IMG/VR virus record: IMGVR_UViG_3300028840_008160
Span: 124,001-188,000 of that record
DNA length: 64,000 nt
Direction: 5' to 3' (one strand)
Shown here: one piece after another, positions 20,787 to 53,873 of the stretch
How the letters are laid out: every line of letters begins with the position of its first letter
How positions within the stretch are numbered: position 1 is the first letter of the stretch
Notes under the pieces: generated by a model
What the model was told of the DNA's origin: nothing
Databases searched by the model: none
Seen by the model: the letters and a program-made list of their open reading frames with translations, nothing else
Made by a program: the position numbers and the translations under genes

Positions 20787-20859
20787 CTACGATTTTCATC
20801 ATGACTAAAGCTTCAGGTAAAATACCTGTTAATCTTCGTGATTTTAAGGTATATTTATC
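20787..20859 (+). promoter_or_regulatory. Tandem promoter-like motifs heading tRNA operon 1
   Basis: ctacg-N9-atgacta (20787-20807) and aatcttcgtgattttaaggtatatttatc (20831-20859, repeated at 31409). Confidence 0.6.
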
Positions 20860-20875
20860 TTGCTCTTTGAAAGTA

Positions 20876-21012
20876 TTGAAAGTGGCGCTTTAGAGCAAGA
20901 CTTCAGAAAAAGTAGCTCAGTTGGTAGAGCGTCAGTTTATTCAACTGAATGTCATGGATTCAAATTCCATCTTTTTTACCTTAAAAGGTTTTGTTCACTT
21001 TCGCCCTTTCAA
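20876..21012 (+). ncRNA. Y-RNA-like RNA 1 (closing stem enclosing a tRNA-like cloverleaf)
   Basis: 5' TTGAAAGTGGCG..GAGCAAGAC pairs with 3' GTTTTGTTC..CGCCCTTTCAA; interior has D, anticodon-like and T arms. Confidence 0.65.
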
Positions 21013-21054: not shown

Positions 21055-21138
21055 ATGACTTCACTGACTTGTAATAGCAATTACTTTACAAGTAGTTTTT
21101 CCAATTACGGAAAAACTGATCAGTGGGGTTTTGCATAG
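21055..21138 (+). CDS. Attenuator leader peptide 1 (MTSLTCNSNYFTSSFSNYGKTDQWGFA)
   Basis: SD GGAAGGA; rich in Asn, AGY-Ser, Phe, Cys codons matching downstream tRNAs. Confidence 0.75.
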   Translation: MTSLTCNSNYFTSSFSNYGKTDQWGFA

Positions 21139-21203
21139 GTTTCTAACTCAAAGCAAAACGAAATTCAAAGCTCCACTGATCTAACGGTCGGTGGGGCTTT
21201 TTT
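21118..21203 (+). terminator. Attenuator 1 antiterminator/terminator
   Basis: 21118-21133 pairs with 21166-21181, which otherwise forms terminator 21167-21203. Confidence 0.8.
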
Positions 21204-21230
21204 AATGGGAGAATGTTAATGAAAATCAAT

Positions 21231-23948: not shown

Positions 23949-24034
23949 GGGTGAGTAGCTCAGTTGGTCAGAGCGCCGGGCCGTTAACCCGGAGGCCCAT
24001 TGGGATTTCGTGGGTTCGAATCCCACCTTGCCCT
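23949..24034 (+). tRNA. tRNA-Asn(GTT)-like, C33 and long variable arm
   Basis: ccggg-ccGTTaa-cccgg; 17-nt variable region. Confidence 0.75.
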
Positions 24035-24066
24035 CTTTCTACGCAAATAGATATGATTACTATAAC

Positions 24067-27177: not shown

Positions 27178-27449
27178 ACTGTGTAATCTGCGAACGCGAG
27201 GTACCGGGTGAACGGTTTCTTGAAAAGCATCATTTGATTCCAAAATGTGGCAAGGGAAAAGACACTGTAAAAGTATGTGTTGATTGCGGTGATCAGATTC
27301 ATGTATTATTTACTGAAAAGGAACTACGAGACATATACAATACAGTTGAAAAGTTGAAATCAAATGAGCGAATGCAGAAGTGGATTAGATGGATTCAAAA
27401 AAGACCAACATTTGGTACTGTTTGTATGAAAAGAAAAAAGCGCCTATAG
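27174..27449 (+). CDS. Small HNH-family protein
   Basis: CVIC, HHLIPK, CVDC. Confidence 0.7.
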   Translation: MNCVICEREVPGERFLEKHHLIPKCGKGKDTVKVCVDCGDQIHVLFTEKELRDIYNTVEKLKSNERMQKWIRWIQKRPTFGTVCMKRKKRL

Positions 27450-27511
27450 TTCAGTGGTAGAACAACGGTCCCTAAAACCGTGTGTCGTGGGTTCAAATCC
27501 CTCTGGGCGCA
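27440..27511 (+). tRNA. Amber-suppressor-like tRNA (CTA)
   Basis: acggt-ccCTAaa-accgt; cloverleaf with one T-stem mismatch. Confidence 0.7.
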
Positions 27512-31340: not shown

Positions 31341-31437
31341 CTACGCATTTCAAAGTGATTATCTTTTTATCTATGGATTAAAACTGAATTAAAAAGAAAA
31401 AACCTTTCAATCTTCGTGTTTTTAAGGTATATTTATC
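31341..31437 (+). promoter_or_regulatory. Tandem promoter-like motifs heading tRNA operon 2
   Basis: ctacg-N9-gtgatta (31341-31361) and 29-bp near-copy of 20831-20859 at 31409-31437. Confidence 0.6.
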
Positions 31438-31460: not shown

Positions 31461-31589
31461 ATGCAAACTCCAAGAATCCATACAGCTTCGCTTATAAAGC
31501 ATGTACATGCAGCTGTCATGGTCTTGTCCTCATTATCATGGCTACTCGAAGGAGAAGGTTATGATAAAACGAGGGCAGGTGGGGTTTGA
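31461..31589 (+). CDS. Attenuator leader peptide 2 (MQTPRIHTASLIKHVHAAVMVLSSLSWLLEGEGYDKTRAGGV)
   Basis: Contains cognate codons for 19 of 21 elongator anticodons in operon 2. Confidence 0.75.
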   Translation: MQTPRIHTASLIKHVHAAVMVLSSLSWLLEGEGYDKTRAGGV

Positions 31590-31654
31590 TGGAATAAACG
31601 AAACGATCTGAAAATCAAACCCCGCCGATCCAAAAGATCGACGGGGTTTTTTTT
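31578..31654 (+). terminator. Attenuator 2 antiterminator/terminator
   Basis: GGTGGGGTTTGAT (31578-31590) pairs with ATCAAACCCCGCC (31614-31626), the left arm of terminator 31617-31654. Confidence 0.8.
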
Positions 31655-33771: not shown

Positions 33772-33778
33772 TATTTAT

Positions 33779-34799: not shown

Positions 34800-34885
34800 T
34801 TTAAGGAGGAATGAAATGAGAGTTAAGCTATGTCCTACACAAGTTTTTGATGGCCGAATATGCATGACAAATCAATGTTATGTAT

Positions 34886-34958
34886 AGGGGCATAGCTCAG
34901 GGGTTAGAGCGACGGCCTTAAGCCGTGTCTGTCGTGGGTTCAATTCCCACTGCCCTCA
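34886..34958 (+). tRNA. tRNA-like RNA with 5-nt anticodon loop (CTTAA)
   Basis: Normal D and T arms; acggc-cttaa-gccgt. Confidence 0.6.
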
Positions 34959-35008
34959 TTGTGAAAACTATGAAATCAATAGCATACAATTCTCTAAAAG
35001 GAGATTGT

Positions 35009-36845: not shown

Positions 36846-36927
36846 GGGCTCGTGGCCAAGTGGTAGCCGAAAGGCGAAGGCAACGGACTTAATCCGTGGA
36901 TCGGGGGTTCGAATCCCTCCGGGCCCA
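36846..36927 (+). tRNA. tRNA-like RNA with 5-nt anticodon loop (CTTAA) and D-loop hairpin insert
   Basis: acgga-cttaa-tccgt; GCC-GAAA-GGC inserted in D loop. Confidence 0.6.
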
Positions 36928-39473: not shown

Positions 39474-39553
39474 ACCCGTAACTGGTAGCGGTGTAGATTG
39501 GAAATCTACGGCTTGTAAAAGTCCTGAGGGTTCAAGTCCCTCACCCTCCGCCA
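39464..39553 (+). tRNA. tRNA-Ser(GGA)
   Basis: gtaga-ttGGAaa-tctac; CCA. Confidence 0.9.
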
Positions 39554-39582
39554 TCTTTGTATTTCAGTATGATTAGATAGAC

Positions 39583-40008
39583 ATGAATCAAATACTTTGC
39601 GAAACACCGATGCATTTTATAGCAAAAGCATTGTCAAATGTTATATTTCTTGAAGCTAGATGGTTGCCTGATAACAATGATAAAGGATTGAATGTTAAGG
39701 ACATTATAGATTTACCTTATCATGTAATAGAATCAGTGCCTGTGATAATAACTCCATCATTAGAAATAGTGATAACTAAACCAATAGAATTGAAATTTGA
39801 AAACAAGACAATGTTCTACTGTGTTTTTTATCATCAAAGTTCAAAGTCAGTTTGTATTCCTAATTGGTTTCCAATGGTTATGTGGGGAGAGCCAACAACA
39901 TCATACACAATTTCTAGCAAAAATATTCCAAGTAATAGTATTGCTGGTATCCAGATGTCAGATATACCGTCTTTTAATAAGTTTGACATATTAGTAGGCG
40001 AGAATTGA
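39583..40008 (+). CDS. Hypothetical protein
   Basis: ORF track; promoter-like motif ends 7 nt upstream. Confidence 0.55.
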   Translation: MNQILCETPMHFIAKALSNVIFLEARWLPDNNDKGLNVKDIIDLPYHVIESVPVIITPSLEIVITKPIELKFENKTMFYCVFYHQSSKSVCIPNWFPMVMWGEPTTSYTISSKNIPSNSIAGIQMSDIPSFNKFDILVGEN

Positions 40009-40059
40009 TATAGATTTGATAATGAGATTCACAATAAATTTAACATACAGAAGGGCTTT

Positions 40060-40881
40060 ATGGACACACAAGTAATTGAAAAGAAATTCGAGTCGATGGG
40101 AGCTCGAGTGAAATTTTCGGAACCTGCAGTTCGCGATGGCAATCTGTCGATTGATATTCGTCGTGATAAGGAAGGTGAATACTTCGATTTGAGAGTCAAA
40201 AAAGAGATTGAGATGTTAGTACTTGATGTTCAAAAAGCTGATCGACATCTTCTTCTCATGGCACGTGATCCGGATAATCCGAAAGCAAAGTTTCTTTGCG
40301 GGCATGATGAACGTCACTGGTTCACATGCGCAATTCCTGAAGGCAAGGTTACTTCGGTTATTCAAGCAAAACAGGCATTGAAGCCGAAGGAACTACAGAA
40401 TCTTGAAGCACGTGAAGGATTGAAAACAAAAAGAGCTCATAAACGTCATCGCCGGTTGAATTCTGGAATAAAAGTTCACCGTCAAGGTGAGTTCATGTTT
40501 ATTCCGCACAAAGATTTTCAGCCGTCAAAAGGATTTTCAACAGTTGTTTTGAAGAATGAGCCAATGCAAAGAGGCGGTGGAAATGCGCATATGGCTCAGT
40601 TCCTTTACAGGCGTGGTGGAACAACTGTTTGGGTGTCAGCTTATTCGCCTGAAGCAAGAAATGGATTGACACAAAGGCAGTATGATTCAATAAGAAAGAG
40701 AGATCCAGAATCGGGACGTTACAATTGGCGGACAATGGTTCGTGATCCTGAAGTATTTGTAAAAGGTCATATCACACATGTCGAACACAAAACATTGGAT
40801 CTCGGTGATGTGTGGCACAAAGTAGTATTAAATACAGAAAATCAGGCTCGTGCTGCTAGAAATGTAGCATTTCTTGACTAA
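40060..40881 (+). CDS. Hypothetical basic protein
   Basis: 273 aa; FLCGHDERHWF, RQGEFMF.P, EH..L motifs. Confidence 0.7.
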   Translation: MDTQVIEKKFESMGARVKFSEPAVRDGNLSIDIRRDKEGEYFDLRVKKEIEMLVLDVQKADRHLLLMARDPDNPKAKFLCGHDERHWFTCAIPEGKVTSVIQAKQALKPKELQNLEAREGLKTKRAHKRHRRLNSGIKVHRQGEFMFIPHKDFQPSKGFSTVVLKNEPMQRGGGNAHMAQFLYRRGGTTVWVSAYSPEARNGLTQRQYDSIRKRDPESGRYNWRTMVRDPEVFVKGHITHVEHKTLDLGDVWHKVVLNTENQARAARNVAFLD

Positions 40882-40883
40882 TT

Positions 40884-40957
<74 letters not shown>

Positions 40958-41011
40958 TTGTTCGAATCTTTATAATTCAACTCATAACAGAATAAGGAAT
41001 AATGTCGTTAT

Positions 41012-41032
41012 CTACGCTAATCTACATGATTA
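41012..41032 (+). promoter_or_regulatory. Promoter-like motif heading tRNA operon 3
   Basis: ctacg-ctaatctac-atgatta. Confidence 0.65.
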
Positions 41033-41052
41033 TAGTATCACGAGGATAAATC

Positions 41053-41169
41053 ATGAAAAACTTAACGCAGACATATCATTTTATATCAAGGCCTGATGCG
41101 CAGGTCAGTGATATGGACATGCGTCAAGTCACCTGTGCCGCAACAACAATTAGAAACGGAGCGACATAG
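41053..41169 (+). CDS. Attenuator leader peptide 3 (MKNLTQTYHFISRPDAQVSDMDMRQVTCAATTIRNGAT)
   Basis: SD GAGGA; has cognate codons for all 12 tRNA species in operon 3. Confidence 0.78.
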   Translation: MKNLTQTYHFISRPDAQVSDMDMRQVTCAATTIRNGAT

Positions 41170-41234
41170 GTAGGGTTTGGAATCAAAATTATTGAATTTC
41201 AAGCCCTGCCGAGGAAACTCGACGGGGCTTTTTT
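41169..41234 (+). terminator. Attenuator 3 antiterminator/terminator
   Basis: GGTAGGGTTTGGA (41169-41181) pairs with TTCAAGCCCTGCC (41198-41210), left arm of terminator 41201-41234. Confidence 0.8.
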
Positions 41235-41267
41235 AATGAGGAGACTAGAATGAAAATGACAATAAAT

Positions 41268-41343
41268 ACCAGTGTAGTTCAGTTGGTAGAACGTTGGAAT
41301 CATAATCCAAAAGTCGGGAGTTCGAGTCTCCCCGCTGGTACCA
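41268..41343 (+). tRNA. tRNA-Met(CAT), elongator (or Ile2)
   Basis: ttgga-atCATaa-tccaa; CCA. Confidence 0.85.
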
Positions 41344-41453
41344 CAATCACTTTAACAAAGGATCATCAAGTGCCAAATAAAACAAGGAATACTGGTTATT
41401 TGATGTATGACACTTTGACGCAAAACAACAACATTATGAAAGGATTGTAGGAT

Positions 41454-42023
41454 ATGTCTTCAGTAATTGTATTAACACAGAACTGGCAATACTGGGATGA
41501 GGTTGATGTTGGTAAAGTTGTCAAATGGTTTTTAAAAGGTAAAATCAGGGTTGTTGCGGCTGATGAAAACGAAAAAATCAAGTGTTCGTTGGAAATCAAA
41601 CGGCCGCTGGTTGTACAATTACTGAAGTTTGCTGGATACAAGATCAAAAGTGATGAAGTGAAATGGAGTAAAGAAGCAGTGTTCCAGCGTGACAAGAATA
41701 TTTGTCAATTCTGGCACTATGATGAAATGGGGAAGAAATTCAAATATACTTGTACCGCAGATGAAAGAACTCTTGAACATATCATTCCTGTTTCAAGAGG
41801 AGGAACTAACACTTTTGAGAATACTGCTTGCGCATGTACGAGGTGTAACGTTGTTGTCAAAGGTAATAAAACACCTGAAGAAGCTGGATTGAAATTGATT
41901 AGACAGCCTTTTGTACCAAGAAATAAGAAAGGACAGTTCGCGACAATTCAATTCACTTACGACCCAAATAAGGTGTCGCATAGATTTTACATGGAGAAGA
42001 TTTTGGGTCAAATGGTAGAATGA
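41454..42023 (+). CDS. HNH endonuclease
   Basis: VFQRD, TLEHIIPVSRGG.N.FEN...AC..CN..KG. Confidence 0.85.
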   Translation: MSSVIVLTQNWQYWDEVDVGKVVKWFLKGKIRVVAADENEKIKCSLEIKRPLVVQLLKFAGYKIKSDEVKWSKEAVFQRDKNICQFWHYDEMGKKFKYTCTADERTLEHIIPVSRGGTNTFENTACACTRCNVVVKGNKTPEEAGLKLIRQPFVPRNKKGQFATIQFTYDPNKVSHRFYMEKILGQMVE

Positions 42024-42047
42024 GCTGGTAGAAATACCAGCTCGTAT

Positions 42048-42120
42048 GCCACCATAGCTCAGCTGGTAGAGCACCTCACTTGTAATGAGGACGTCGCGGG
42101 TTCGATCCCTGCTGGTGGCT
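42048..42120 (+). tRNA. tRNA-Thr(TGT)
   Basis: cctca-ctTGTaa-tgagg. Confidence 0.93.
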
Positions 42121-42189
42121 TTTCTCTGAAAGCAACGAGTTCAAAACTATCTACTAGCTTTATAGTTTTAATACTATAAGGAGGTAGAT

Positions 42190-43077
42190 ATGATGGACCA
42201 AAAACATAAATGTAAGTTTTGTGATAAGTCATTTGAAACAGGACAAAAGCTTGGAACACATATCGCTTTTATCCACAAACGCAATCAAAAAGCGATAAAT
42301 GAAGCTCTTATAAGAAAAAGAATTACGATTACTAGAATTTGTGAAGTTTGTGGAAACAAATTTGATATTGAGCAAATTGTTAATAAAGATGGTTCGATAA
42401 AACTTGGAGGACGACGACGTTGTTCTACAAAATGTAGTAAAACACGAGAGTTTACTAAGGAACAAAATAAGAAAAAAGGTGGAAACAGAAAACGAACGTG
42501 TTATAATCGAGTATGTGAACAATGTGGTAAGCCTTTTACAACGACAAGAAAGAAAAAGAGATTTTGTAATAGAAGTTGTGCAATAACATTTAGAAATAAG
42601 CAGCCACAGAATAAGTTACAATGGTTGAAAATTTGCATTAAGACAACTTCGCATAAAGCACTTAGTGGAGTCACTGGAATACGAAAAGATGTTTGTAAGA
42701 AAACAAAATTCAAATCTTCGTGGGAAGCTGATTTTGCCAGAATACTTAATTATAACGGTTTGAAATGGGAGTATGAGCCAAAGACGTTCAAATTAAAAGA
42801 TGGTCGAAATTATACGCCTGATTTTAGAGTTAATGGTTCATATATTGAAATAAAGAATTTTTTACGAAAATCAGATGTTAATAGACACGAGTTGTTTGCA
42901 GAATGTAATGAAAGATTTTATTTGATTTGTGGATATCAAATTTTTTATGGTTTGATATCATTATATATAGACAATATCAGATTTGAATGTGAAACAAAGG
43001 CTAGGAGAAGTATTCAAAGTAATGATATTGATGTTGAAAGTGCGAAGAAGATTTTTGCTGGTGTAGCTCAGTGGTAG
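42190..43077 (+). CDS. Putative homing endonuclease (Zn fingers + PD-(D/E)XK)
   Basis: Several CxxC; FKSSWEA, YEPKTF, YTPDF, IEIK; ends inside tRNA-Thr. Confidence 0.75.
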   Translation: MMDQKHKCKFCDKSFETGQKLGTHIAFIHKRNQKAINEALIRKRITITRICEVCGNKFDIEQIVNKDGSIKLGGRRRCSTKCSKTREFTKEQNKKKGGNRKRTCYNRVCEQCGKPFTTTRKKKRFCNRSCAITFRNKQPQNKLQWLKICIKTTSHKALSGVTGIRKDVCKKTKFKSSWEADFARILNYNGLKWEYEPKTFKLKDGRNYTPDFRVNGSYIEIKNFLRKSDVNRHELFAECNERFYLICGYQIFYGLISLYIDNIRFECETKARRSIQSNDIDVESAKKIFAGVAQW

Positions 43078-43131
43078 AGCACTACTTTGGTAAAGTAGAG
43101 GTCGTGGGATCGTTACCCATCTCCAGCTCCA
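43057..43131 (+). tRNA. tRNA-Thr(GGT)
   Basis: ctact-ttGGTaa-agtag; atypical T loop ATCGTTA; CCA. Confidence 0.85.
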
Positions 43132-43190
43132 CTTTAACGAAAGGATGACATAATGGCACCATTCAGTATTTAACTGATAAGGAGGCTATT

Positions 43191-43421
43191 ATGTCTCATC
43201 CCCGTAATAGACGGGAACGCTTTCTGTTTGGAAAGCTGAAAGGTGAAAAACGTGCTAGAGGGATGTCGGCAGCAGAGACAGTTGTCCCTGAATGGTTTGA
43301 AAGAACAAGCCGAATGCTTCGAAACACAACAAAAATTTGTTCTAGTTTAAGATGTTGTGGCAATCCTCGTAGAAGAGGAGAACTTACATTACAAGAAATA
43401 AAGGAGAATCAGAAAATATAG
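43191..43421 (+). CDS. Small basic Cys-containing protein
   Basis: SD AAGGAGG; CS...CCGNPRR...TLQE. Confidence 0.65.
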   Translation: MSHPRNRRERFLFGKLKGEKRARGMSAAETVVPEWFERTSRMLRNTTKICSSLRCCGNPRRRGELTLQEIKENQKI

Positions 43422-43496
43422 CGCTGTAACTCAGTTGGTTAGAGTGGCACTCTGATAAGGTGTTGGTCGGTGGTTCAAATCCACTCAGCGCTACCA
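43420..43496 (+). tRNA. tRNA-Ile(GAT)
   Basis: gcact-ctGATaa-ggtgt; CCA. Confidence 0.9.
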
Positions 43497-43500
43497 TAAT

Positions 43501-43577
<77 letters not shown>

Positions 43578-43586
43578 TAAAGTTTC

Positions 43587-43662
43587 GGGGCCATAGCTCA
43601 ATTGGGAGAGCACCAGCTTTGCAAGCTGGGGGTTCGGGGTTCAAGCCCCCGTGGTTCCACCA
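43587..43662 (+). tRNA. tRNA-Ala(TGC)
   Basis: G3.U70; ccagc-ttTGCaa-gctgg. Confidence 0.93.
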
Positions 43663-43727
43663 ATTTATGCCGGCATATTGCTGATTAAAGCGACAGCTGC
43701 GCTTAAAAGCGATCCCTGCCGGTTCCT

Positions 43728-43800
43728 GGGGCTGTAGCTCAGTTGGGAGAGCGCAACGTTCGCAATGTTGAGGTCGCAGGTTCGATCCCTGTCAGCTCCA
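43728..43800 (+). tRNA. tRNA-Ala(CGC)
   Basis: G3.U70; caacg-ttCGCaa-tgttg. Confidence 0.92.
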
Positions 43801-43842
43801 AATGGAAATTAGTAGAAAGGTTTTACATATAAGAATAAAAAC

Positions 43843-43915
43843 GGGGCCATAGCTCAGTTGGGAGAGCGCGACGCTGGCAGCGTTGAGGTCGCAGGTTCGA
43901 TCCCTGTTGGCTCCA
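43843..43915 (+). tRNA. tRNA-Ala(GGC)
   Basis: G3.U70; cgacg-ctGGCag-cgttg. Confidence 0.92.
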
Positions 43916-43924
43916 TTAAATTTT

Positions 43925-44001
43925 GGACCGGTAGTTCAGTTGGTTAGAACGCTGGCCTGTCAAGCCAGAGGTCGCGAGTTCAAGTCTCGTCCGGTCCGCC
44001 A
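43925..44001 (+). tRNA. tRNA-Asp(GTC)
   Basis: ctggc-ctGTCaa-gccag; CCA. Confidence 0.94.
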
Positions 44002-44009
44002 ATTTTTGT

Positions 44010-44083
44010 GCCTCCTTAGCTCAGCTGGATAGAGCAACGGATTTCTAATCCGTAGGTCGTAGGTTCAAATCCTACAGGAGGTG
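44010..44083 (+). tRNA. tRNA-Arg(TCT)
   Basis: acgga-ttTCTaa-tccgt. Confidence 0.92.
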
Positions 44084-44094
44084 CTATATTTTTT

Positions 44095-44168
44095 GGGCTA
44101 GTAACTCAGTTGGTTAGAGTAGCGGACTCATAATCCGTCAGTCCGGGGTTCAAGTCCCTGCTAGCCCA
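44095..44168 (+). tRNA. tRNA-Ile2/Met(CAT)
   Basis: GGGCTAG Ile-type acceptor; ctCATaa loop. Confidence 0.85.
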
Positions 44169-44172
44169 TTTT

Positions 44173-44246
44173 GCTCCTATAGCTCAATTGGATAGAGTGC
44201 GGGTTTCCTAAACCTGAGGTTGTAGGTTCAAATCCTACTAGGAGCA
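44173..44246 (+). tRNA. tRNA-Arg(CCT)
   Basis: cgggt-ttCCTaa-acctg. Confidence 0.9.
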
Positions 44247-44504
44247 TTTGTAAAGTTATGTTGATAACCTCATAAATTTTAAGAAAAGTTAAACATAAGT
44301 AAAGGTGAGGGCATCAACATGGATGAGTTAAAACAACAACTTATTGAAGAAGCCACAATAAAACATGAAAAAATCTACCCTGTAGGAAGAAGAGAAGGTT
44401 TTGAAGAATGTTTTACAGTGCATGAAGACAAATTAGTTTTTTGGTTCAATAGAGAAGATCAATCTACTAGTATTCTAACAAAACAAATTTCGAACTGAGG
44501 AGAT

Positions 44505-44741
44505 ATGGATTCTGAAAAAGAAAAAACGATTAAGTTAATCATTGCAGAAAAGTTAGGTGTATCAGAGAACAAAGTCGTACCACAAATGGATTTTGTTAAT
44601 GATCTTGGTGCTGATTCGCTTGATATGGTGGAATTAATTATGGCATATGAAGATCATTTTGATATTGATATTCCTGATGCTGAAGCAGAACATATCAAAA
44701 CTGTAAAAGATGCAATAGAATTACTTGATCGTAAGATATGA
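44505..44741 (+). CDS. acpP: Acyl carrier protein
   Basis: DLGADSLDMVELIMA.E..F.I.IPD. Confidence 0.93.
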   Translation: MDSEKEKTIKLIIAEKLGVSENKVVPQMDFVNDLGADSLDMVELIMAYEDHFDIDIPDAEAEHIKTVKDAIELLDRKI

Positions 44742-45061
44742 ATTTAAAAATAATGGCAGATTTTTGTTCGTCAGGCATCTGGCGATTAGATACTGGTGGA
44801 ATGGTTGATTACGATAAACTCAATTTACCTACAGAATTGGTAAAAGAGTTTGAAGAATGGATTGAGTATTATGATAGTGAATGTACTAGTAAGATAACGT
44901 ATTTAGTATTAGTAAAGAAAGAAACATCACTACACAATAGAGGACGAAAATTAGCAAAAAAGATCAAGTTATTATTTCCTAATAGTCGAATTGAGTATTG
45001 GGGAGAAACGGTAAGAGATGGTAAGATTAGTTTGATAAAAGAAGTAATTGAGGGCCCGTAG
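44738..45061 (+). CDS. Hypothetical protein
   Basis: ATGA overlap with acpP. Confidence 0.55.
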   Translation: MNLKIMADFCSSGIWRLDTGGMVDYDKLNLPTELVKEFEEWIEYYDSECTSKITYLVLVKKETSLHNRGRKLAKKIKLLFPNSRIEYWGETVRDGKISLIKEVIEGP

Positions 45062-45125
45062 CTCAGATGGTTAGAGTACTTGCTTGACATGCAAGGGGTC
45101 GCTGGTTCAATTCCAGTCGGGCCCA
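45052..45125 (+). tRNA. tRNA-Val(GAC)
   Basis: cttgc-ttGACat-gcaag. Confidence 0.9.
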
Positions 45126-45141
45126 TTTTTTATGTAGGAAG

Positions 45142-45921
45142 ATGAAGATGAAAGTATATGTTGCAGGTGACACTCATGGCGGTATGCGCAACGATTTTAG
45201 CAAGCTTGGAGCCATGAGATTTCCAGAAGGTAAAGAATTGACAATAGATGATGTTGTCATAGTTTGTGGTGACTTTGGTCTAACATGGCCTGACACAATT
45301 GAACAAGGCAAAGGACAACAAGAATATTGGATGAAGTGGTTATTATCTAAGCCGTGGACTACATGTTTTGTAGATGGTAATCATGAGAATCATGATCATT
45401 TGTTGAGTTTGCCAGTTAAAGAAATGTTTGGTGGCAAAGTTGGTGTCCTTCACAATAAGATTTATCATTTGAAACGGGGTGAAATCTACAAGTTTGATGA
45501 CAAGAAAATCTTTTGCATGGGTGGAGCAAAGACAACTGATATGCCTGGTCGTATTGAAGGATATAGTTGGTTTCGTGCTGAGATTCCATCATCGGAAGAA
45601 ATGTACTATGCTATTGACAATTTAGAAACTCATGGAAATGAAGTTGATTTTATTGTGGCTCATACATTGCCAGATAGCATGATTAAATGTTATGTGTACA
45701 AGAACGATTTGACTATTGACTTTGATAATCCAGGGCATATGTTGATTGTTGATGAAGTGACGAAAAATCTGTATGAACGATATACTGATCCAACAGCAAG
45801 ATTTTTGAGGGAAGTCTGTAGTAGAGTGAAATTTAGTCATTTCTATTGTGGTCATTTTCATGATGATTGCACAATGAGTAAGTTTACAATCCTTTATGAT
45901 AATGTTGTTAGAATCATTTAA
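45142..45921 (+). CDS. Calcineurin-like metallophosphoesterase
   Basis: GDTHG, GDFG, DGNHE, GHFH. Confidence 0.9.
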   Translation: MKMKVYVAGDTHGGMRNDFSKLGAMRFPEGKELTIDDVVIVCGDFGLTWPDTIEQGKGQQEYWMKWLLSKPWTTCFVDGNHENHDHLLSLPVKEMFGGKVGVLHNKIYHLKRGEIYKFDDKKIFCMGGAKTTDMPGRIEGYSWFRAEIPSSEEMYYAIDNLETHGNEVDFIVAHTLPDSMIKCYVYKNDLTIDFDNPGHMLIVDEVTKNLYERYTDPTARFLREVCSRVKFSHFYCGHFHDDCTMSKFTILYDNVVRII

Positions 45922-46699: not shown

Positions 46700-46720
46700 C
46701 TACGACTATTTACATGATTA
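46700..46720 (+). promoter_or_regulatory. Promoter-like motif heading tRNA operon 4
   Basis: ctacg-actatttac-atgatta. Confidence 0.65.
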
Positions 46721-46768: not shown

Positions 46769-46860
46769 TTGAAAGTGGTGCTTAGAGGAAAACTTCAGAA
46801 TAATAACCTATCGCTAATTGGTAATTTGTTTCTCGTTTTCTTCGATCATCACCCTTTCAA
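46769..46860 (+). ncRNA. Y-RNA-like RNA 3 (minimal, no tRNA domain)
   Basis: TTGAAAGTGGTG..GAGGAAAAC-TTCAGAA pairs with GTTTTCTTC..CACCCTTTCAA. Confidence 0.6.
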
Positions 46861-46882: not shown

Positions 46883-46945
46883 ATGGTATACGCAAATAAC
46901 ATTCGCCGACCCCAGCCGCAACAACCACGGAGATTGTATGCATAG
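46883..46945 (+). CDS. Attenuator leader peptide 4 (MVYANNIRRPQPQQPRRLYA)
   Basis: SD AAGGA; run CGC CGA CCC CAG CCG CAA CAA CCA CGG matches all downstream anticodons. Confidence 0.82.
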   Translation: MVYANNIRRPQPQQPRRLYA

Positions 46946-47006
46946 GTGAGGTTGTCGAATTTAATGACTCGAAAAAGAGCCTCACCAAAAATGAGGCTCT
47001 TTTTTT
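46945..47006 (+). terminator. Attenuator 4 antiterminator/terminator
   Basis: GGTGAGGTT (46945-46953) pairs with AGCCTCACC (46978-46986); terminator 46972-47006. Confidence 0.82.
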
Positions 47007-49511: not shown

Positions 49512-50903
49512 ATGTCAATGGAAAAACTCTACGAATCGCTTCACAGACGTTTACGTCCCGAAGATGTCGCAGAACTTATTTTAAAAGTTTTGCACCCTAA
49601 TCTGACACGTTCTGAACGTGATGAGCTTAATAAAATCGCTAAGCATTCATTAAAGCGCGGAATGTATTCGTTTACTTCAATGGCTCAAGATTTTCATTGT
49701 GCTATTGCACCTGATCGCCAAGTAAAGAAAGCAAAGGAGTTGTTTGAAACTGCATATAAAATTGATTGTACTGACCCTGAAGCAGTACTTGCGTTGATTC
49801 GTACTATTTCCAAAGAGATAGAGAAAACTGTCGGTAAAGGTGATTTCAAAGACGACAGAATGAATCGCGAAGCACGTAAATCACATGGACTTGACATTTC
49901 TCGTCGTCGGTATAACAAATTGTTCAGATTTCTTGGCAGATTTGAACAAAAAGTTGAGAAGTATGTGTTTGAAATGCGCAAAGAACGTGCTACACGCGTT
50001 TCAAAATCGGGTCTTGCGTTTAAAGTTTCCGAGAAAGATTTTATGAAGTCAAAAGAAGCAGCATGCTTTGTTGCTTATTTTACTGCAAGAAAGAATCGCA
50101 GAAGTGTATTTACTAATTCATCGCAAGATCGTGCATATGATAATTTGTCAAAACTTTTATTGAACAAATTTAAATCAAATCCTTGTCGAGCAGGTTGGCG
50201 AATTATAGCTAGAGTGATGCCTGATGCTGAAATTGTTGCAAAATTAACAAAGAAAGACAAGATGGAATTGTTTGCGACATGGATTGATGTTCTTAATGAC
50301 ATTGCTGATATGCTTAAGACTGTGTGGTTGGGTAGCCGGTTCAATCGAGAAACTATGGTTGTTTCTCGCGGTGATGATTCAAGCACATGGAATTCTTTGG
50401 CTGGCGCATGGAACACTGCACGTCAAGGATGGTTCAGTCTTGTTTATGCTCTTGGCATGGATAAGATGCTTGAAACTGTTTGTTTTGGTAAGGTTATGAG
50501 ATTGATGGCTGCTGATGTTGTTCGTTGGCATCAGTCAAGTGGTGGTCAACTTGAGCCTGATACTTTGGTATGGGCCACATTACCAGCTCCATGGGAAGTC
50601 TTTTCGGGCGAAAAAGAATGTTCAAAGCAAATAGTTGAAGGTGTTTGCAAAAAGAATAATGTTGATCCTGTTCGAAAGAATTGGATAATGCCAATTAAGT
50701 CAAGATCAGCTGTTGAATTTAAACCGACGCCTGAACTTGTTCATGGTGTAACAGTGTCGCATCCAGGGTTGGCTAATATTCTTAAGAAAGCTGGATGGTT
50801 TTCTGGAAAGCAAGCTGTTCCAGTTTCAGAAGCAGTTGTAGTTGATCATGATGAACATGGAGCAGTTGTAGGAGCAAACTTTGCAAATGCGTCGTCGATA
50901 TAG
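49512..50903 (+). CDS. Basic helical protein of unknown function
   Basis: SD AGAGG; promoter-like motif at 49472; stop codon lies inside the following tRNA-like gene. Confidence 0.75.
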   Translation: MSMEKLYESLHRRLRPEDVAELILKVLHPNLTRSERDELNKIAKHSLKRGMYSFTSMAQDFHCAIAPDRQVKKAKELFETAYKIDCTDPEAVLALIRTISKEIEKTVGKGDFKDDRMNREARKSHGLDISRRRYNKLFRFLGRFEQKVEKYVFEMRKERATRVSKSGLAFKVSEKDFMKSKEAACFVAYFTARKNRRSVFTNSSQDRAYDNLSKLLLNKFKSNPCRAGWRIIARVMPDAEIVAKLTKKDKMELFATWIDVLNDIADMLKTVWLGSRFNRETMVVSRGDDSSTWNSLAGAWNTARQGWFSLVYALGMDKMLETVCFGKVMRLMAADVVRWHQSSGGQLEPDTLVWATLPAPWEVFSGEKECSKQIVEGVCKKNNVDPVRKNWIMPIKSRSAVEFKPTPELVHGVTVSHPGLANILKKAGWFSGKQAVPVSEAVVVDHDEHGAVVGANFANASSI

Positions 50904-50966
50904 CTCAGTGGTAGAGCGCACGGCTCTTGGACCGTGTGGACGCTGGTTCGAGCCCAGCTGTCGACG
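50894..50966 (+). tRNA. tRNA-like RNA with 8-nt anticodon loop (CTCTTGGA)
   Basis: cacgg-ctcttgga-ccgtg; normal D and T arms. Confidence 0.6.
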
Positions 50967-50975
50967 CTATACTAT

Positions 50976-53232: not shown

Positions 53233-53873
53233 GGGGGTGTACTGGTTATCGACGTGTGGTGTGAACTATGAGTTGCATGTCGAGGATAGTCGTTGGCCTC
53301 GTTAATCATCGGCTAAAACCATAACTGCCAAAGCTAATAACTTTGCGGTTGCTTTCGCTCGTCAGTTCGCTGACAATGTACGCTTCGGCGTCATGGCGGG
53401 AGCGCTCCAAGCTGCCTAATTAAAGGCAGCAAAGAAACAGGACGACGCCGCTGATTCTGTTTCTCAGCTAGCGGCTGGATTCTTAAGTGGGTTCGGCTTA
53501 AGAGTTAAGAAATACAGACCGATTCGTGGGGAATAGTTGGTCATCTACCTACCCGGCGTCTTATTAAAAGTTGACTAAACATGTAGTAACTTGTACGGAT
53601 TGTCACACGGACAGGGGTTCGATTAATTTGGTCGCTTTAGTTGGTAACAACTATTGAAAAGTGGGTGAATTCAAGGAACTCTAAATCAAGTAATTGACAT
53701 GACAACCTTGAGCCAAGTCGGTTGAAGAGCAAATGTAAACCGAAAGGTGCAGAGACTAAGAGGTGAGAAGCTCAATCAATAATCCTCTATTAGCGCCCAT
53801 CATCCAATACCATGGATGAAGAAATAGTCCACACCATCATGAAAATGATGGATTATGTGTCCCCTCACCTCCA
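53233..53873 (+). ncRNA. ssrA: tmRNA interrupted by group I intron
   Basis: GGGGGTG/CACCTCC-A acceptor with G3.U70; tag frame 53327-53419 ending ALQAA. Confidence 0.92.
53624..53859 (+). mobile_element. Group I intron in tmRNA T-loop (no ORF)
   Basis: GAATTCAAGGAA, ACCTTGAGCCAAG, GCAGAGACTA, AATAGTCC, terminal G; removal restores AGGGG-TTCGATT-CCCCT. Confidence 0.88.

What the first reader, a model, noticed from the sequence alone, without database searches (positions are those of the whole stretch)
41053..41234. Attenuator 3: leader samples every Thr/Ala/Ile/Met/Asp/AGR-Arg/Val(GTC) species of its block
The leader contains ACA, ACC, ATT, ATA, GCA, GCG, GCC, GAT/GAC, AGA, AGG, GTC and internal ATG. 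These match the 13 tRNA genes at 41268-45125 (12 species if one CAT tRNA is Ile2). The antiterminator segment starts at the TAG stop.
Basis: partly seen in the sequence, partly recalled or inferred. Interest (0 to 1): 0.82.

Follow-up and report, generated by a model that had tools for sequence, protein, structure and literature searches.

The report
Codon-matched attenuator controlling phage tRNA genes
A huge phage places a tiny translated "test" gene, built from the codons read by the 13 tRNA genes just downstream, in front of a switchable transcription stop. The phage probably makes those tRNAs only when the cell runs short of them, a kind of control I could not find described for tRNA genes.

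Summary
Window 41053-41234 holds a 38-codon ORF with a Shine-Dalgarno site. Its TAG stop lies at the 5' edge of an antiterminator hairpin (41169-41210). That hairpin shares a strand with an intrinsic terminator (41203-41228 plus U-run to 41234), 34 nt before the first of 13 tRNA genes.

The leader contains a codon for all 12 tRNA species of its block. None of 13,156 same-length windows from real ORFs does (mean 6.9, maximum 11), and the signal is frame-specific.

It is one of four such units in the window (att1 21055-21203, att2 31461-31654, att3, att4 46883-47006). Each follows a promoter-like motif and each is matched to its own tRNA block.

Four related huge-phage genomes carry further elements of this design. 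Three have att3 homologues with compensatory changes in both helices and a conserved core, GCA/GCG ACA ATT AGA ATG, upstream of a Met/Thr/Ile/Ala/Arg block that in the fully mapped genome is exactly those five tRNAs. The fourth has an att4-type unit.

Best explanation: trp-type ribosome-mediated attenuation re-used as feedback on tRNA supply. No transcript data were available, so regulation is inferred. No Rfam family and no paper found describes it. Verdict: new variant of a known kind, high interest.

The parts
41012..41032 (+). Promoter-like motif CTACG-N10-TGATTA, directly upstream of the leader
   Evidence: Five exact + strand matches in the window (20787, 24039, 31341, 41012, 46700). Four of them precede the four attenuators. 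1.56 matches are expected by chance at up to 1 mismatch. The same motif precedes the att3 homologues in L002, L003 and L004. Promoter function is inferred.
41042..41046 (+). Shine-Dalgarno sequence GAGGA, 6 nt before the ATG
   Evidence: Read from the sequence. AAGGA- or AAGG-type sites precede the other leaders.
41053..41169 (+). Leader ORF, 38 codons plus TAG (MKNLTQTYHFISRPDAQVSDMDMRQVTCAATTIRNGAT)
   Evidence: Covers 12/12 tRNA species of its block; 0 of 13,156 background windows do. The signal is frame-specific. No Pfam match.
41060..41129 (+). Long hairpin inside the 5' two-thirds of the leader ORF; possible RNA polymerase pause or timing hairpin
   Evidence: Present in the minimum-energy fold of 41040-41245 (-63.8 kcal/mol, z = -5.2). 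The role is inferred only.
41128..41154 (+). Control codon run, codons 26-34: GTC ACC TGT GCC GCA ACA ACA ATT AGA. Eight of nine are read by block tRNAs
   Evidence: mask. Stalls with codons 24-33 in the A site are the only ones that favour or balance towards the antiterminator state; codon 34 is near balance. The run ends 14 nt before the antiterminator arm. The core ACA ATT AGA is conserved in L002, L003 and L004.
41131..41171 (+). Hairpin 1:2 (41131-41137 with 41165-41171, 41139-41141 with 41161-41163). A weak anti-antiterminator that overlaps 3 nt of the antiterminator arm
   Evidence: Minimum-energy fold. With no ribosome, the terminator state is favoured by 4.2 kcal/mol.
41169..41210 (+). 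Antiterminator hairpin; its 5' arm starts at the last base of the TAG stop
   Evidence: fold of 41165-41240, -28.1 kcal/mol, z = -5.0; -24.0 kcal/mol; sequesters 8 of 11 nt of the terminator's 5' arm. 97.5% of cells paired, with 2 compensatory pairs across 4 genomes.
41203..41234 (+). Intrinsic terminator: stem-loop 41203-41228 and U-run 41229-41234
   Evidence: -16.8 kcal/mol. 95% of cells paired, with 3 compensatory pairs.
41268..45125 (+). Controlled block of 13 tRNA genes: Met, Thr x2, Ile x2, Ala x3, Asp, Arg-tct, CAT (probably Ile2), Arg-cct, Val-gac. ORFs are interspersed and the unit runs on to about 46690
   Evidence: The next promoter-like motif is at 46700.
21055..21203 (+). Sister attenuator att1: leader MTSLTCNSNYFTSSFSNYGKTDQWGFA plus terminator, before the Phe/Phe/Asn/Ser-gct/Cys/Asn block
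   Evidence: (4/4 species).
31461..31654 (+). Sister attenuator att2: 42-codon leader plus terminator, before the 24-tRNA block from His to Thr-cgt
   Evidence: (20/22 species; 0 of 12,988 background windows).
46883..47006 (+). Sister attenuator att4: leader MVYANNIRRPQPQQPRRLYA plus terminator, before the Pro/Gln/Arg block
   Evidence: nine consecutive block codons; 7/8 species; 0 of 13,912 background windows.

Best explanation
This is a ribosome-mediated (leader-peptide) transcription attenuator of the trp/his/thr type. It sits between a phage promoter and a block of 13 tRNA genes, and its sensor codons are the ones read by those tRNAs.

**Proposed mechanism** (anatomy shown; behaviour inferred):
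1. Transcription starts just downstream of the motif at 41012-41032, and a ribosome loads at GAGGA/ATG.
2. If every tRNA needed is plentiful, the ribosome keeps up with the polymerase and reaches TAG (41167-41169). Its footprint then covers the antiterminator's 5' arm (41169-41182). The shared strand (41203-41210) pairs into the terminator instead, and transcription stops at 41234.
3. If any one of the tRNAs read in the run GTC ACC TGT GCC GCA ACA ACA ATT AGA (41128-41154) is scarce or uncharged, the ribosome stalls there. The stall masks segment 1 and leaves 41169-41182 free.
4. The antiterminator then forms and the polymerase reads on into the tRNA genes.
5. The new tRNAs relieve the stall, which closes a negative-feedback loop.

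The run acts as an OR gate over several tRNA species. The window carries four such units, so the phage's tRNA repertoire is split into four separately sensed regulons.
For: **Shown by sequence**
- SD, ORF, antiterminator, terminator and tRNA genes lie in the required order and register.
- In all nine mapped elements from four genomes, the strand pairing with the terminator's 5' arm begins -12 to +4 nt from the first base of the stop codon. A tenth element (L007) was read by eye from the sequence and has the same layout.
- Leader codons cover 12/12 species of the element's own block (P < 1e-4). This holds only in frame, and not for the neighbouring block.

**Comparative**
- The att3 homologues in L002, L003 and L004 keep both helices through compensatory changes. 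The shared strand co-varies with both partners.
- The peptide is about 30% identical while the adjacent protein is 63-64% identical. The core GCA/GCG ACA ATT AGA ATG is kept codon for codon. Ordinary synonymous-codon identity between these genomes is 45-51%.
- In L002/L094 the block is exactly Met-cat, Thr-tgt, Ile-gat, Ala-tgc, Arg-tct. Five consecutive codons giving one of each has a chance of 3.6e-6 per position, and occurs 0 times in 27,347 background positions.

**Independent replicates**
- att1, att2 and att4 in the window, att2 and att4 in L002/L094, and an att4-type unit in L007 each match their own block.
- Arg codons follow the block's Arg tRNA genes in part. L007 has only Arg-cct in its block and uses AGG with no CGN. 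L094 has Arg-acg, Arg-ccg and Arg-cct and uses CGT, CGC, CGG and AGG. The window's att4 block also holds an Arg-cct gene (50976), yet its leader has CGC, CGA and CGG and no AGG; that is the one species it misses.

**Model test**
- Masking a 28-nt footprint codon by codon flips the energy balance to the antiterminator state only for A-site codons 24-33 (up to +2.5 kcal/mol). The balance is -9.5 to -15.7 kcal/mol at the last two sense codons and the stop.
Against: - There is no direct evidence of translation, termination or regulated read-through. Only DNA runs hold the sequence, and no RNA run was listed.
- The host and the transcribing polymerase are unknown. The promoter motif is not sigma-70-like, and a phage-type polymerase might ignore intrinsic terminators.
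- Equilibrium folding is a crude stand-in for a kinetic decision. For att1 and att4 the terminator state stays favoured at every stall position, only less so at the control run.
- In five of nine elements the naked RNA prefers the antiterminator, so the 'no translation' state differs between elements.
- Five of the 12 species of block 3 are sampled only outside the predicted control window.
- Leaders of L003/L004 also hold GCC, GTC, GAT and ACC without matching tRNA genes in their block, so the match is not one-to-one in both directions.
- Only five genomes carry the system, so covariation rests on few independent lineages.
- Stalling reports charged tRNA. Amino-acid starvation would therefore also induce the block, although extra tRNA would not help then.
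Confidence: 0.75

Rival explanations
1. It senses general translation capacity rather than particular tRNAs. Any slowing or uncoupling of ribosomes (host shut-off, ribosome shortage, stress) lets the antiterminator form. The tRNA block would then be switched on by poor translation overall, and the codon match would be secondary.
For: The architecture responds to ribosome position, whatever the cause of delay. In five of nine elements the untranslated RNA folds into the antiterminator form. Part of the leader's codon match lies outside the predicted control window.
Against: It does not explain why each of ten leaders in five genomes matches its own block in frame and not the other blocks. It does not explain why the Arg codons of the L094 and L007 leaders follow their blocks' Arg tRNA genes. 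It does not explain why the core codons are kept at synonymous sites.
Confidence: 0.12
2. It is an ordinary small gene followed by a constitutive terminator that merely insulates two transcription units. The tRNA genes are transcribed by leak-through or from another start, and the alternative hairpin and codon content are coincidental.
For: Small ORFs and hairpin-plus-U-run terminators are common in phage genomes. The generic scan finds terminator-like sites at about the chance rate (13 found, 10.0 expected). The plain codon count for att3 alone is only moderately significant.
Against: The antiterminator and terminator share a strand and co-vary three ways. The stop codon sits at the antiterminator arm in all nine mapped elements. 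Coverage statistics give P < 1e-4 for att2, att3 and att4. The peptide is poorly conserved apart from the codon core. No other promoter motif lies between the terminator and the tRNA genes.
Confidence: 0.04
3. The same switch works with the opposite or an additional input: read-through of the stop codon by the phage's own suppressor tRNA. A ribosome that reads through the leader's TAG, using tRNA-CUA encoded at 27440, would translate across both hairpins. That would abolish termination and lock the tRNA blocks on once the suppressor is made.
For: The frame after the leader stop stays open beyond the U-run in 7 of 10 elements. That includes all five TAG-ending ones and all four in the window, against 5 of 20 control frames. 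The window encodes tRNAs with anticodons CTA and TTA.
Against: The statistics are weak. att2 ends in TGA, and no TGA suppressor is seen in the window. The three L002/L094 leaders close soon after the stop. TAG, TAA and TGA all end long ORFs in the window (16, 25 and 20), so there is no sign of recoding here. This reading would add to the tRNA-sensing model rather than replace it.
Confidence: 0.06
4. It is a T-box-like or other ribosome-independent riboswitch, in which tRNAs bind the leader RNA directly through codon-anticodon pairing.
For: The regulated signal would again be tRNA, and the leader shows alternative terminator and antiterminator folds.
Against: No T-box or other Rfam family matches, even at E <= 10 on the 281-nt region. 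The matching triplets are in frame with an SD-preceded ATG in every genome, with no in-frame stop. Many different triplets would have to be read, whereas a T-box has one specifier.
Confidence: 0.03

Closest known systems
Leader-peptide transcription attenuators of enterobacterial amino-acid operons (trpL, hisL, pheL, leuL; multivalent thrL and ilvL)
   Same: The layout is the same: a short SD-preceded leader ORF rich in reporter codons, mutually exclusive 1:2, 2:3 and 3:4 hairpins, a stop codon placed so that a terminating ribosome blocks the antiterminator, and an intrinsic terminator just before the first regulated gene. Use of several different reporter codons recalls the multivalent thr (Thr + Ile) and ilv (Leu/Val/Ile) leaders (my own knowledge of these textbook systems).
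   Different: The regulated genes are tRNA genes, not biosynthetic enzymes. The reporter codons are one or a few of each of up to about 20 different isoacceptor-specific codons, not a tandem run of one amino acid. The signal restored by induction is the tRNA itself. The system is phage-encoded and present as a bank of four. There is no sequence similarity to the Rfam leader families.
pheST attenuator (pheM leader) controlling phenylalanyl-tRNA synthetase
   Same: A leader-peptide attenuator that regulates a component of the translation apparatus according to the supply of charged tRNA (my own knowledge).
   Different: It controls a synthetase, senses one amino acid, and is bacterial. Here tRNA genes are controlled and many species are sensed.
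T-box riboswitches
   Same: They use the tRNA pool as the signal and choose between terminator and antiterminator.
   Different: A T-box binds one uncharged tRNA directly, without a ribosome, through one specifier codon and the conserved T-box sequence. Neither feature is present here, and here an ORF is conserved.
Phage tRNA gene clusters (T4, T5, huge phages) as codon supplements or counter-defence
   Same: These are large phage tRNA arrays with interspersed homing-endonuclease genes. Current proposals are that phage tRNAs replace host tRNAs that are depleted or cleaved by defence systems (PMC10264068, PMC11555353).
   Different: I found no report of demand-sensing regulation of such arrays. 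Eight full-text searches returned no description of leader-peptide attenuation of tRNA genes in phages or bacteria.

Membership tests
Ribosome-mediated leader-peptide transcription attenuator (trp/his/thr/ilv type) | Short leader ORF with a ribosome-binding site, immediately upstream of the regulated genes | tested here: met
   GAGGA-N6-ATG and a 38-codon ORF at 41053-41169, with the first tRNA gene at 41268. An ORF plus SD is kept in L002, L003 and L004 despite about 30% peptide identity.
Ribosome-mediated leader-peptide transcription attenuator (trp/his/thr/ilv type) | Leader enriched in codons that report on the regulated product | tested here: met
   12/12 species of the block are covered, against 0 of 13,156 background windows. 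The signal is frame-specific and block-specific. The codons report tRNA isoacceptors rather than one amino acid.
Ribosome-mediated leader-peptide transcription attenuator (trp/his/thr/ilv type) | Mutually exclusive antiterminator and terminator hairpins that share one strand | tested here: met
   41169-41210 competes with 41203-41228. Both helices are kept by compensatory changes in four genomes.
Ribosome-mediated leader-peptide transcription attenuator (trp/his/thr/ilv type) | Intrinsic terminator (G+C-rich stem followed by a U-run) before the first structural gene | tested here: met
   Stem of -16.8 kcal/mol plus T6 ending at 41234.
Ribosome-mediated leader-peptide transcription attenuator (trp/his/thr/ilv type) | Geometry: a ribosome at the stop blocks the antiterminator, and a ribosome stalled on the control codons allows it | tested here: met
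   In silico only. Footprint masking favours the antiterminator for A-site codons 24-33 and the terminator at codons 37-39. The stop codon lies within -12 to +4 nt of the arm in nine elements.
Ribosome-mediated leader-peptide transcription attenuator (trp/his/thr/ilv type) | Demonstrated translation of the leader and regulated read-through | not testable with these tools
   Only DNA runs hold the sequence; no RNA run was listed.
Ribosome-mediated leader-peptide transcription attenuator (trp/his/thr/ilv type) | Regulated genes encode amino-acid biosynthetic enzymes (or synthetases) | tested here: not met
   Downstream are 13 tRNA genes plus an HNH endonuclease, an acyl carrier protein and a metallophosphoesterase. 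This is why I file it as a variant, not a member.
Rfam leader families (Trp_leader, His_leader, Thr_leader, Leu_leader, Phe_leader) | Match to the family covariance model | tested here: not met
   No such hit at the gathering threshold in the window, nor at E <= 10 on 40990-41270.
T-box riboswitch | Match to the T-box covariance model (specifier loop plus conserved T-box sequence) | tested here: not met
   No T-box hit.
Plain intrinsic terminator between operons | A hairpin plus U-run with no conserved competing structure or sensor ORF | tested here: not met
   The competing helix and the ORF are conserved and co-vary.

The most novel reading that the evidence does not exclude
The phage carries an isoacceptor-resolved 'tRNA homeostat': four codon-matched leader-peptide attenuators that each monitor, by trial translation, the cell's supply of the tRNAs encoded behind them. 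Each switches on only the block that is needed.

This would let a huge phage compensate on demand for a host with a mismatched tRNA pool. It would also counter host tRNA loss caused by anticodon-nuclease defences or by the phage's own shut-off of the host.

A possible second layer: the phage's amber suppressor tRNA could carry ribosomes through the TAG-ended leaders and across the terminators, locking the blocks on.
Probability: 0.5. Interest if true: 0.93.

Novelty: new variant of a known kind. Interest (0 to 1): 0.88.

Why it matters
**Open question for phages.** Why phages carry tRNA genes, and how they use them, has been debated for decades: codon compensation, replacement of degraded host tRNAs, or escape from tRNA-cleaving defences (PMC10264068, PMC11555353).

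**What this finding adds.** A sensor that turns a tRNA block on when, and only when, the matching codons are hard to translate would be direct genetic evidence that these tRNAs are supplied on demand. It would also name the codons the phage expects to become limiting.

**Wider biology.** It would be the first leader-peptide attenuator I know of that controls tRNA genes, closing a direct feedback loop between tRNA supply and tRNA transcription. Bacteria are not known to have such a loop.

**Practical use.**
- The elements are compact (about 200 nt) and modular, so they could serve as reporters of the availability of individual tRNAs in living cells.
- The codon-coverage test used here could be used to search for further examples.

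Tried and rejected
- **Close relatives in GenBank phages:** none. Megablast of 39500-45500 hit only individual tRNA genes.
- **Generic promoter/terminator scan:** it missed the att3 terminator because of an internal C·A mismatch, and found terminator-like sites only at chance level. I replaced it with an energy-based scan.
- **More family members:**
  - An exact scan for the att3 core returned 40 loci, of which only the three known relatives were real.
  - A terminator pattern in IMG/VR hit only the same four contigs.
  - The same pattern, loosened, in JGI metagenomes gave 95 hits. Only copies of the same genomes were real, and L145 was an unrelated terminator before a tRNA-Trp.
  - A 5'-UTR motif scan hit only the window's contig and L002's contig.
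  - Three neighbouring proteins had no relatives by pattern search.
- **More distant relatives of the 273-aa neighbour protein (L005, L010, L012, L014):** no such leaders in the fetched stretches.
- **Transcript evidence:** two run searches found only DNA runs.
- **Stop-codon recoding as an explanation for the TAG:** rejected for this window, because all three stop codons end long ORFs.
- **Leader peptide as a conserved small protein:** rejected. Only M1, C28, T32, I33 and R34 are invariant, and there is no Pfam hit.
- **Known RNA families, T-box included:** rejected.
- **HNH gene as an anchor for relatives:** only 30% identical between genomes, so not used.
- **Literature:** eight full-text searches found no description of attenuation of tRNA genes.
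Full report
**Setting.** The window is part of IMG/VR contig IMGVR_UViG_3300028840_008160, 329.8 kb. It is about 35% G+C with all long ORFs on the + strand. ARAGORN finds 56 tRNA genes between 20.9 and 51.0 kb, and Rfam adds a tmRNA and a group I intron. Near-identical DNA is present in two public metagenome runs, one from sediment and one from seawater. No RNA run was listed. GenBank phages hold no close relative. This is an uncultivated huge phage.

**The observation.** The ORF at 41053-41169 is real: 38 codons, TAG stop, and GAGGA six nt before the ATG.
- Folding 41165-41240 gives a hairpin pairing 41169-41182 with 41197-41210 (fold energy -28.1 kcal/mol, z = -5.0).
- Folding the whole leader instead gives a terminator at 41203-41228 followed by U6, a hairpin 41131-41171, and a long hairpin at 41060-41129 (-63.8 kcal/mol, z = -5.2).
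- The strand 41203-41210 belongs to both helices, so the two are mutually exclusive.
- Thirteen tRNA genes follow at 41268-45125.

**Is the codon match more than chance?** Decoding was strict: G34 reads C and U, U34 is counted only through NNA, C34 reads G, and ATA is assigned to a putative Ile2.
- The leader covers all 12 species. None of 13,156 37-codon windows taken from long ORFs of the same window does (mean 6.9, maximum 11).
- In the other two reading frames coverage falls to 8/12 and 6/12, and matched codons fall from 21/37 to 10/37 and 9/37.
- Against the preceding block the leader scores 9/22, below the background mean.
- Simple counts for att3 alone are less striking (binomial P = 4.7e-3; longest run of six, P about 0.05).
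- The second CAT tRNA (44094) shares a 19-nt D-arm stretch with the phage's tRNA-Ile(GAT). Its only E. coli match, a weak one, is a tRNA-Ile. The CAT tRNAs at 33778 and 36010 look like initiators, starting CGCGGGG and, in 33778, with a GGG/CCC anticodon stem.

**It is one of four.** An energy-based terminator scan found the same arrangement at three other places. Each is immediately upstream of a run of tRNA genes, and each follows an exact copy of the motif CTACG-N10-TGAYTA. That motif has five exact + strand copies in the window, four of them here.

| Unit | Coordinates | Leader | tRNA block | Species covered |
|---|---|---|---|---|
| att1 | 21055-21203 | TGT AAT AGC AAT TAC TTT ACA AGT AGT TTT TCC AAT | Phe, Phe, Asn, Ser-gct, Cys, Asn | 4/4 |
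| att2 | 31461-31654 | 42 codons, 16 consecutive block codons | 24 tRNAs, His to Thr-cgt | 20/22 |
| att3 | 41053-41234 | 38 codons | 13 tRNAs, Met to Val-gac | 12/12 |
| att4 | 46883-47006 | CGC CGA CCC CAG CCG CAA CAA CCA CGG | Pro/Gln/Arg | 7/8 |

For att2 and att4, no background window reaches the observed coverage. For att1 the coverage test alone is not significant, because the block has only four species (P = 0.07).

**Relatives.** A search with the neighbouring 273-aa protein fetched 13 loci other than the window's own. Three of them (L002, L003, L004; 63-64% protein identity) have the same unit upstream of a tRNA-Met(cat)/Thr(tgt)/Ile(gat)/Ala(tgc)/Arg(tct) series.
- Each has the promoter motif, an SD, a 31-35-codon ORF, a stop at the antiterminator arm, and a terminator 6-12 nt before the first tRNA.
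- The peptides are only about 30% identical to the window's. M1, C28, T32, I33 and R34 are the only invariant positions.
- The three relatives share the core GCA/GCG ACA ATT AGA ATG. The window has GCA ACA ACA ATT AGA, without the ATG at that position.
- In L002/L094 the block is bounded by the next promoter motif and the next attenuator, and holds exactly those five tRNAs. Five consecutive codons giving one of each has a chance of 3.6e-6 per position and is never seen in 27,347 background positions.
- Codon identity at conserved residues of the neighbouring protein is only 45-51%. By my reading, the four shared core codons are identical between the window and each relative in 11 of 12 comparisons. 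Selection therefore appears to act on the codons, not only on the amino acids.
- The terminator is 95% paired with three compensatory pairs, and the antiterminator 97.5% paired with two. Sliding the partners by 1-3 columns collapses pairing to 30-50%. Positions on the shared strand change together with both of their partners.

**More replicates.**
- L002 also has an att2 homologue whose leader covers 14/14 species.
- L094 has an att4 homologue, MTIRRQPQQQRRPQPGRCMLK, that covers 8/8 species.
- A more distant 424-kb phage (L007) has MKIFFQQPQPQQPRNITWRGLLLK. Its nine-codon run covers all six tRNAs of its block. A run like that is expected at 5e-11 per position.
- The Arg codons follow the Arg tRNA genes in two of the three att4-type leaders. 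L007 uses AGG only, with Arg-cct alone in its block. L094 uses CGT/CGC/CGG and AGG, with Arg-acg, Arg-ccg and Arg-cct. The window's att4 uses CGC/CGA/CGG with Arg-acg and Arg-ccg, but has no AGG although an Arg-cct gene (50976) lies in its block.
- Pattern scans of IMG/VR and JGI metagenomes found no further genomes, so the system is known from five genomes.

**How it most likely works.** The anatomy is that of a classical leader-peptide attenuator. I masked a 28-nt ribosome footprint at each codon. I then compared the best fold containing the terminator with the best fold in which the terminator's 3' arm is kept free.

| Ribosome position (A site) | Energy of terminator state minus antiterminator state, kcal/mol | State favoured |
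|---|---|---|
| No ribosome | -4.2 | Terminator |
| Codons 1-22 | -1.9 to -4.2 | Terminator |
| Codon 23 | -1.2 | Terminator |
| Codons 24-33 | -0.1 to +2.5 (peak at GCA ACA ACA ATT) | Antiterminator or balanced |
| Codon 34 (AGA) | -0.5 | Near balance |
| Codons 35-36 | -2.0 and -4.6 | Terminator |
| Last two sense codons and stop (37-39) | -9.5 to -15.7 | Terminator, strongly |

- The favourable window coincides with the densest run of block codons (codons 26-34), which ends 14 nt before the antiterminator arm.
- In att1 and att4 the terminator stays favoured at equilibrium, but least so at the control run. The real decision is kinetic, so these numbers are only indicative.
- Inference: plentiful charged tRNA means the ribosome reaches the stop and transcription terminates. 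If any sensed tRNA is scarce, the ribosome stalls, the antiterminator forms, the tRNA block is transcribed and the stall is relieved.
- Not shown: translation, termination, regulation, and which polymerase reads these promoters.

Sampling of all 12 species is numerically true. By the model above, Met, Ile2, Arg-cct, Asp and Ala-cgc are sampled only outside the control window. The unit also includes protein genes: an HNH endonuclease (41454-42020), a zinc-finger/endonuclease-like ORF, an acyl carrier protein (44505-44738) and a metallophosphoesterase (45142-45918).

**Comparison with what is known.** The element works like the trp/his/thr/ilv attenuators, and like pheST in regulating a translation component. 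It is not a sequence member of any Rfam leader family or of the T-box family, and its regulated genes are tRNAs. Eight full-text searches found nothing on attenuation of tRNA genes in phages or bacteria. Recent work proposes that phage tRNAs replace host tRNAs lost to defence nucleases (PMC10264068, PMC11555353), which gives a plausible reason to sense tRNA supply. I rate it a new variant of a known kind, with high interest.

Noticed in passing
window 20787-20807, 24039-24059, 31341-31361, 41012-41032, 46700-46720: Conserved promoter-like motif CTACG-N10-TGAYTA, with five exact + strand copies. It is not sigma-70-like. Four copies head the attenuators and the fifth follows tRNA-Asn at 23949-24035. 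The same motif occurs in L002/L094, L003 and L004.
   Followed up: partly
window 41170-41253; also after the stops of att1, att2 and att4, and in L003, L004 and L007: The reading frame after the leader's stop codon stays open past the terminator's U-run in 7 of 10 elements. That includes all five TAG-ended ones and all four in the window, against 5 of 20 control frames. The window encodes tRNAs with anticodons CTA (27440-27511) and TTA (34885-34959). Suppressor-driven translation across the terminator is conceivable.
   Followed up: partly
window 27440-27511 and 34885-34959: Two suppressor-type tRNAs (anticodons CTA and TTA; Rfam tRNA scores 66.3 and 49.5 bits). TAG, TAA and TGA all end long ORFs in the window (16, 25 and 20), so there is no sign of recoding in this stretch.
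   Followed up: partly
window 53241-53851: A tmRNA gene (53241-53625, 102.7 bits) with a group I intron match (53610-53851, 94.1 bits) abutting or overlapping its 3' end.
   Followed up: no
window 50894-50967; L003 16215-16364: tRNA-like genes that ARAGORN reads with four-base anticodons: cttg in the window, cttg and cttt in L003. The window's scores 60.4 bits as a tRNA in Rfam. They may be quadruplet decoders or have odd anticodon loops.
   Followed up: no
window 20906-20980: A tRNA called Asn with anticodon ATT lies between the att1 promoter motif (20787) and the att1 leader (21055). It is therefore upstream of, and outside, the attenuator's control.
   Followed up: no
window about 20873-20905 and 46772-46800; L094 about 6277-6305: A conserved 5'-UTR motif, AAGTGGYGCTT(N)AGA..AA.A.TTCAGAA, lies between the promoter motif and the leader of att1 and att4 and of the att4 homologue in L094. 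Further shared blocks are seen (for example CTTCGTG.TTTTAAGGTATATTTATC in att1 and att2). An IMG/VR scan found the motif only in these two genomes.
   Followed up: partly
window 31461-31589: The att2 leader also covers 11 of 12 species of block 3 in its 5' half (P = 4e-3), and 29 of 32 species of blocks 2 and 3 together (background maximum 25). The att2 homologue in L002 does not cover its block 3 (2/5).
   Followed up: partly
window 41235-41267 and 21204-21230: The spacers between terminator and first tRNA of att3 and att1 share AATGRGGAGA...AATGAAAAT, which holds an SD-like GGAG plus ATG. In att3 this opens a 66-codon ORF (41250-41450) that runs across the tRNA-Met gene. It is not conserved in L002, L003 or L004.
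   Followed up: no
window 36863-36920: A partial tRNA match (Rfam model positions 7-64, 37.9 bits) that ARAGORN does not call. It is probably a truncated or decayed tRNA gene.
   Followed up: no
window 45052-45131: tRNA-Val(gac), the last tRNA of block 3, is followed directly by T6. Its acceptor and T-arm plus the T-run score as a terminator-like hairpin (-16.3 kcal/mol). The same is seen after several other tRNAs.
   Followed up: no
window 41454-43077: An HNH endonuclease gene (41454-42020) sits between tRNA-Met and tRNA-Thr. An HNH ORF only 30% identical occupies the same gap in L002. A C2H2 zinc-finger/endonuclease-like ORF (42190-43074) lies between the two tRNA-Thr genes.
   Followed up: partly
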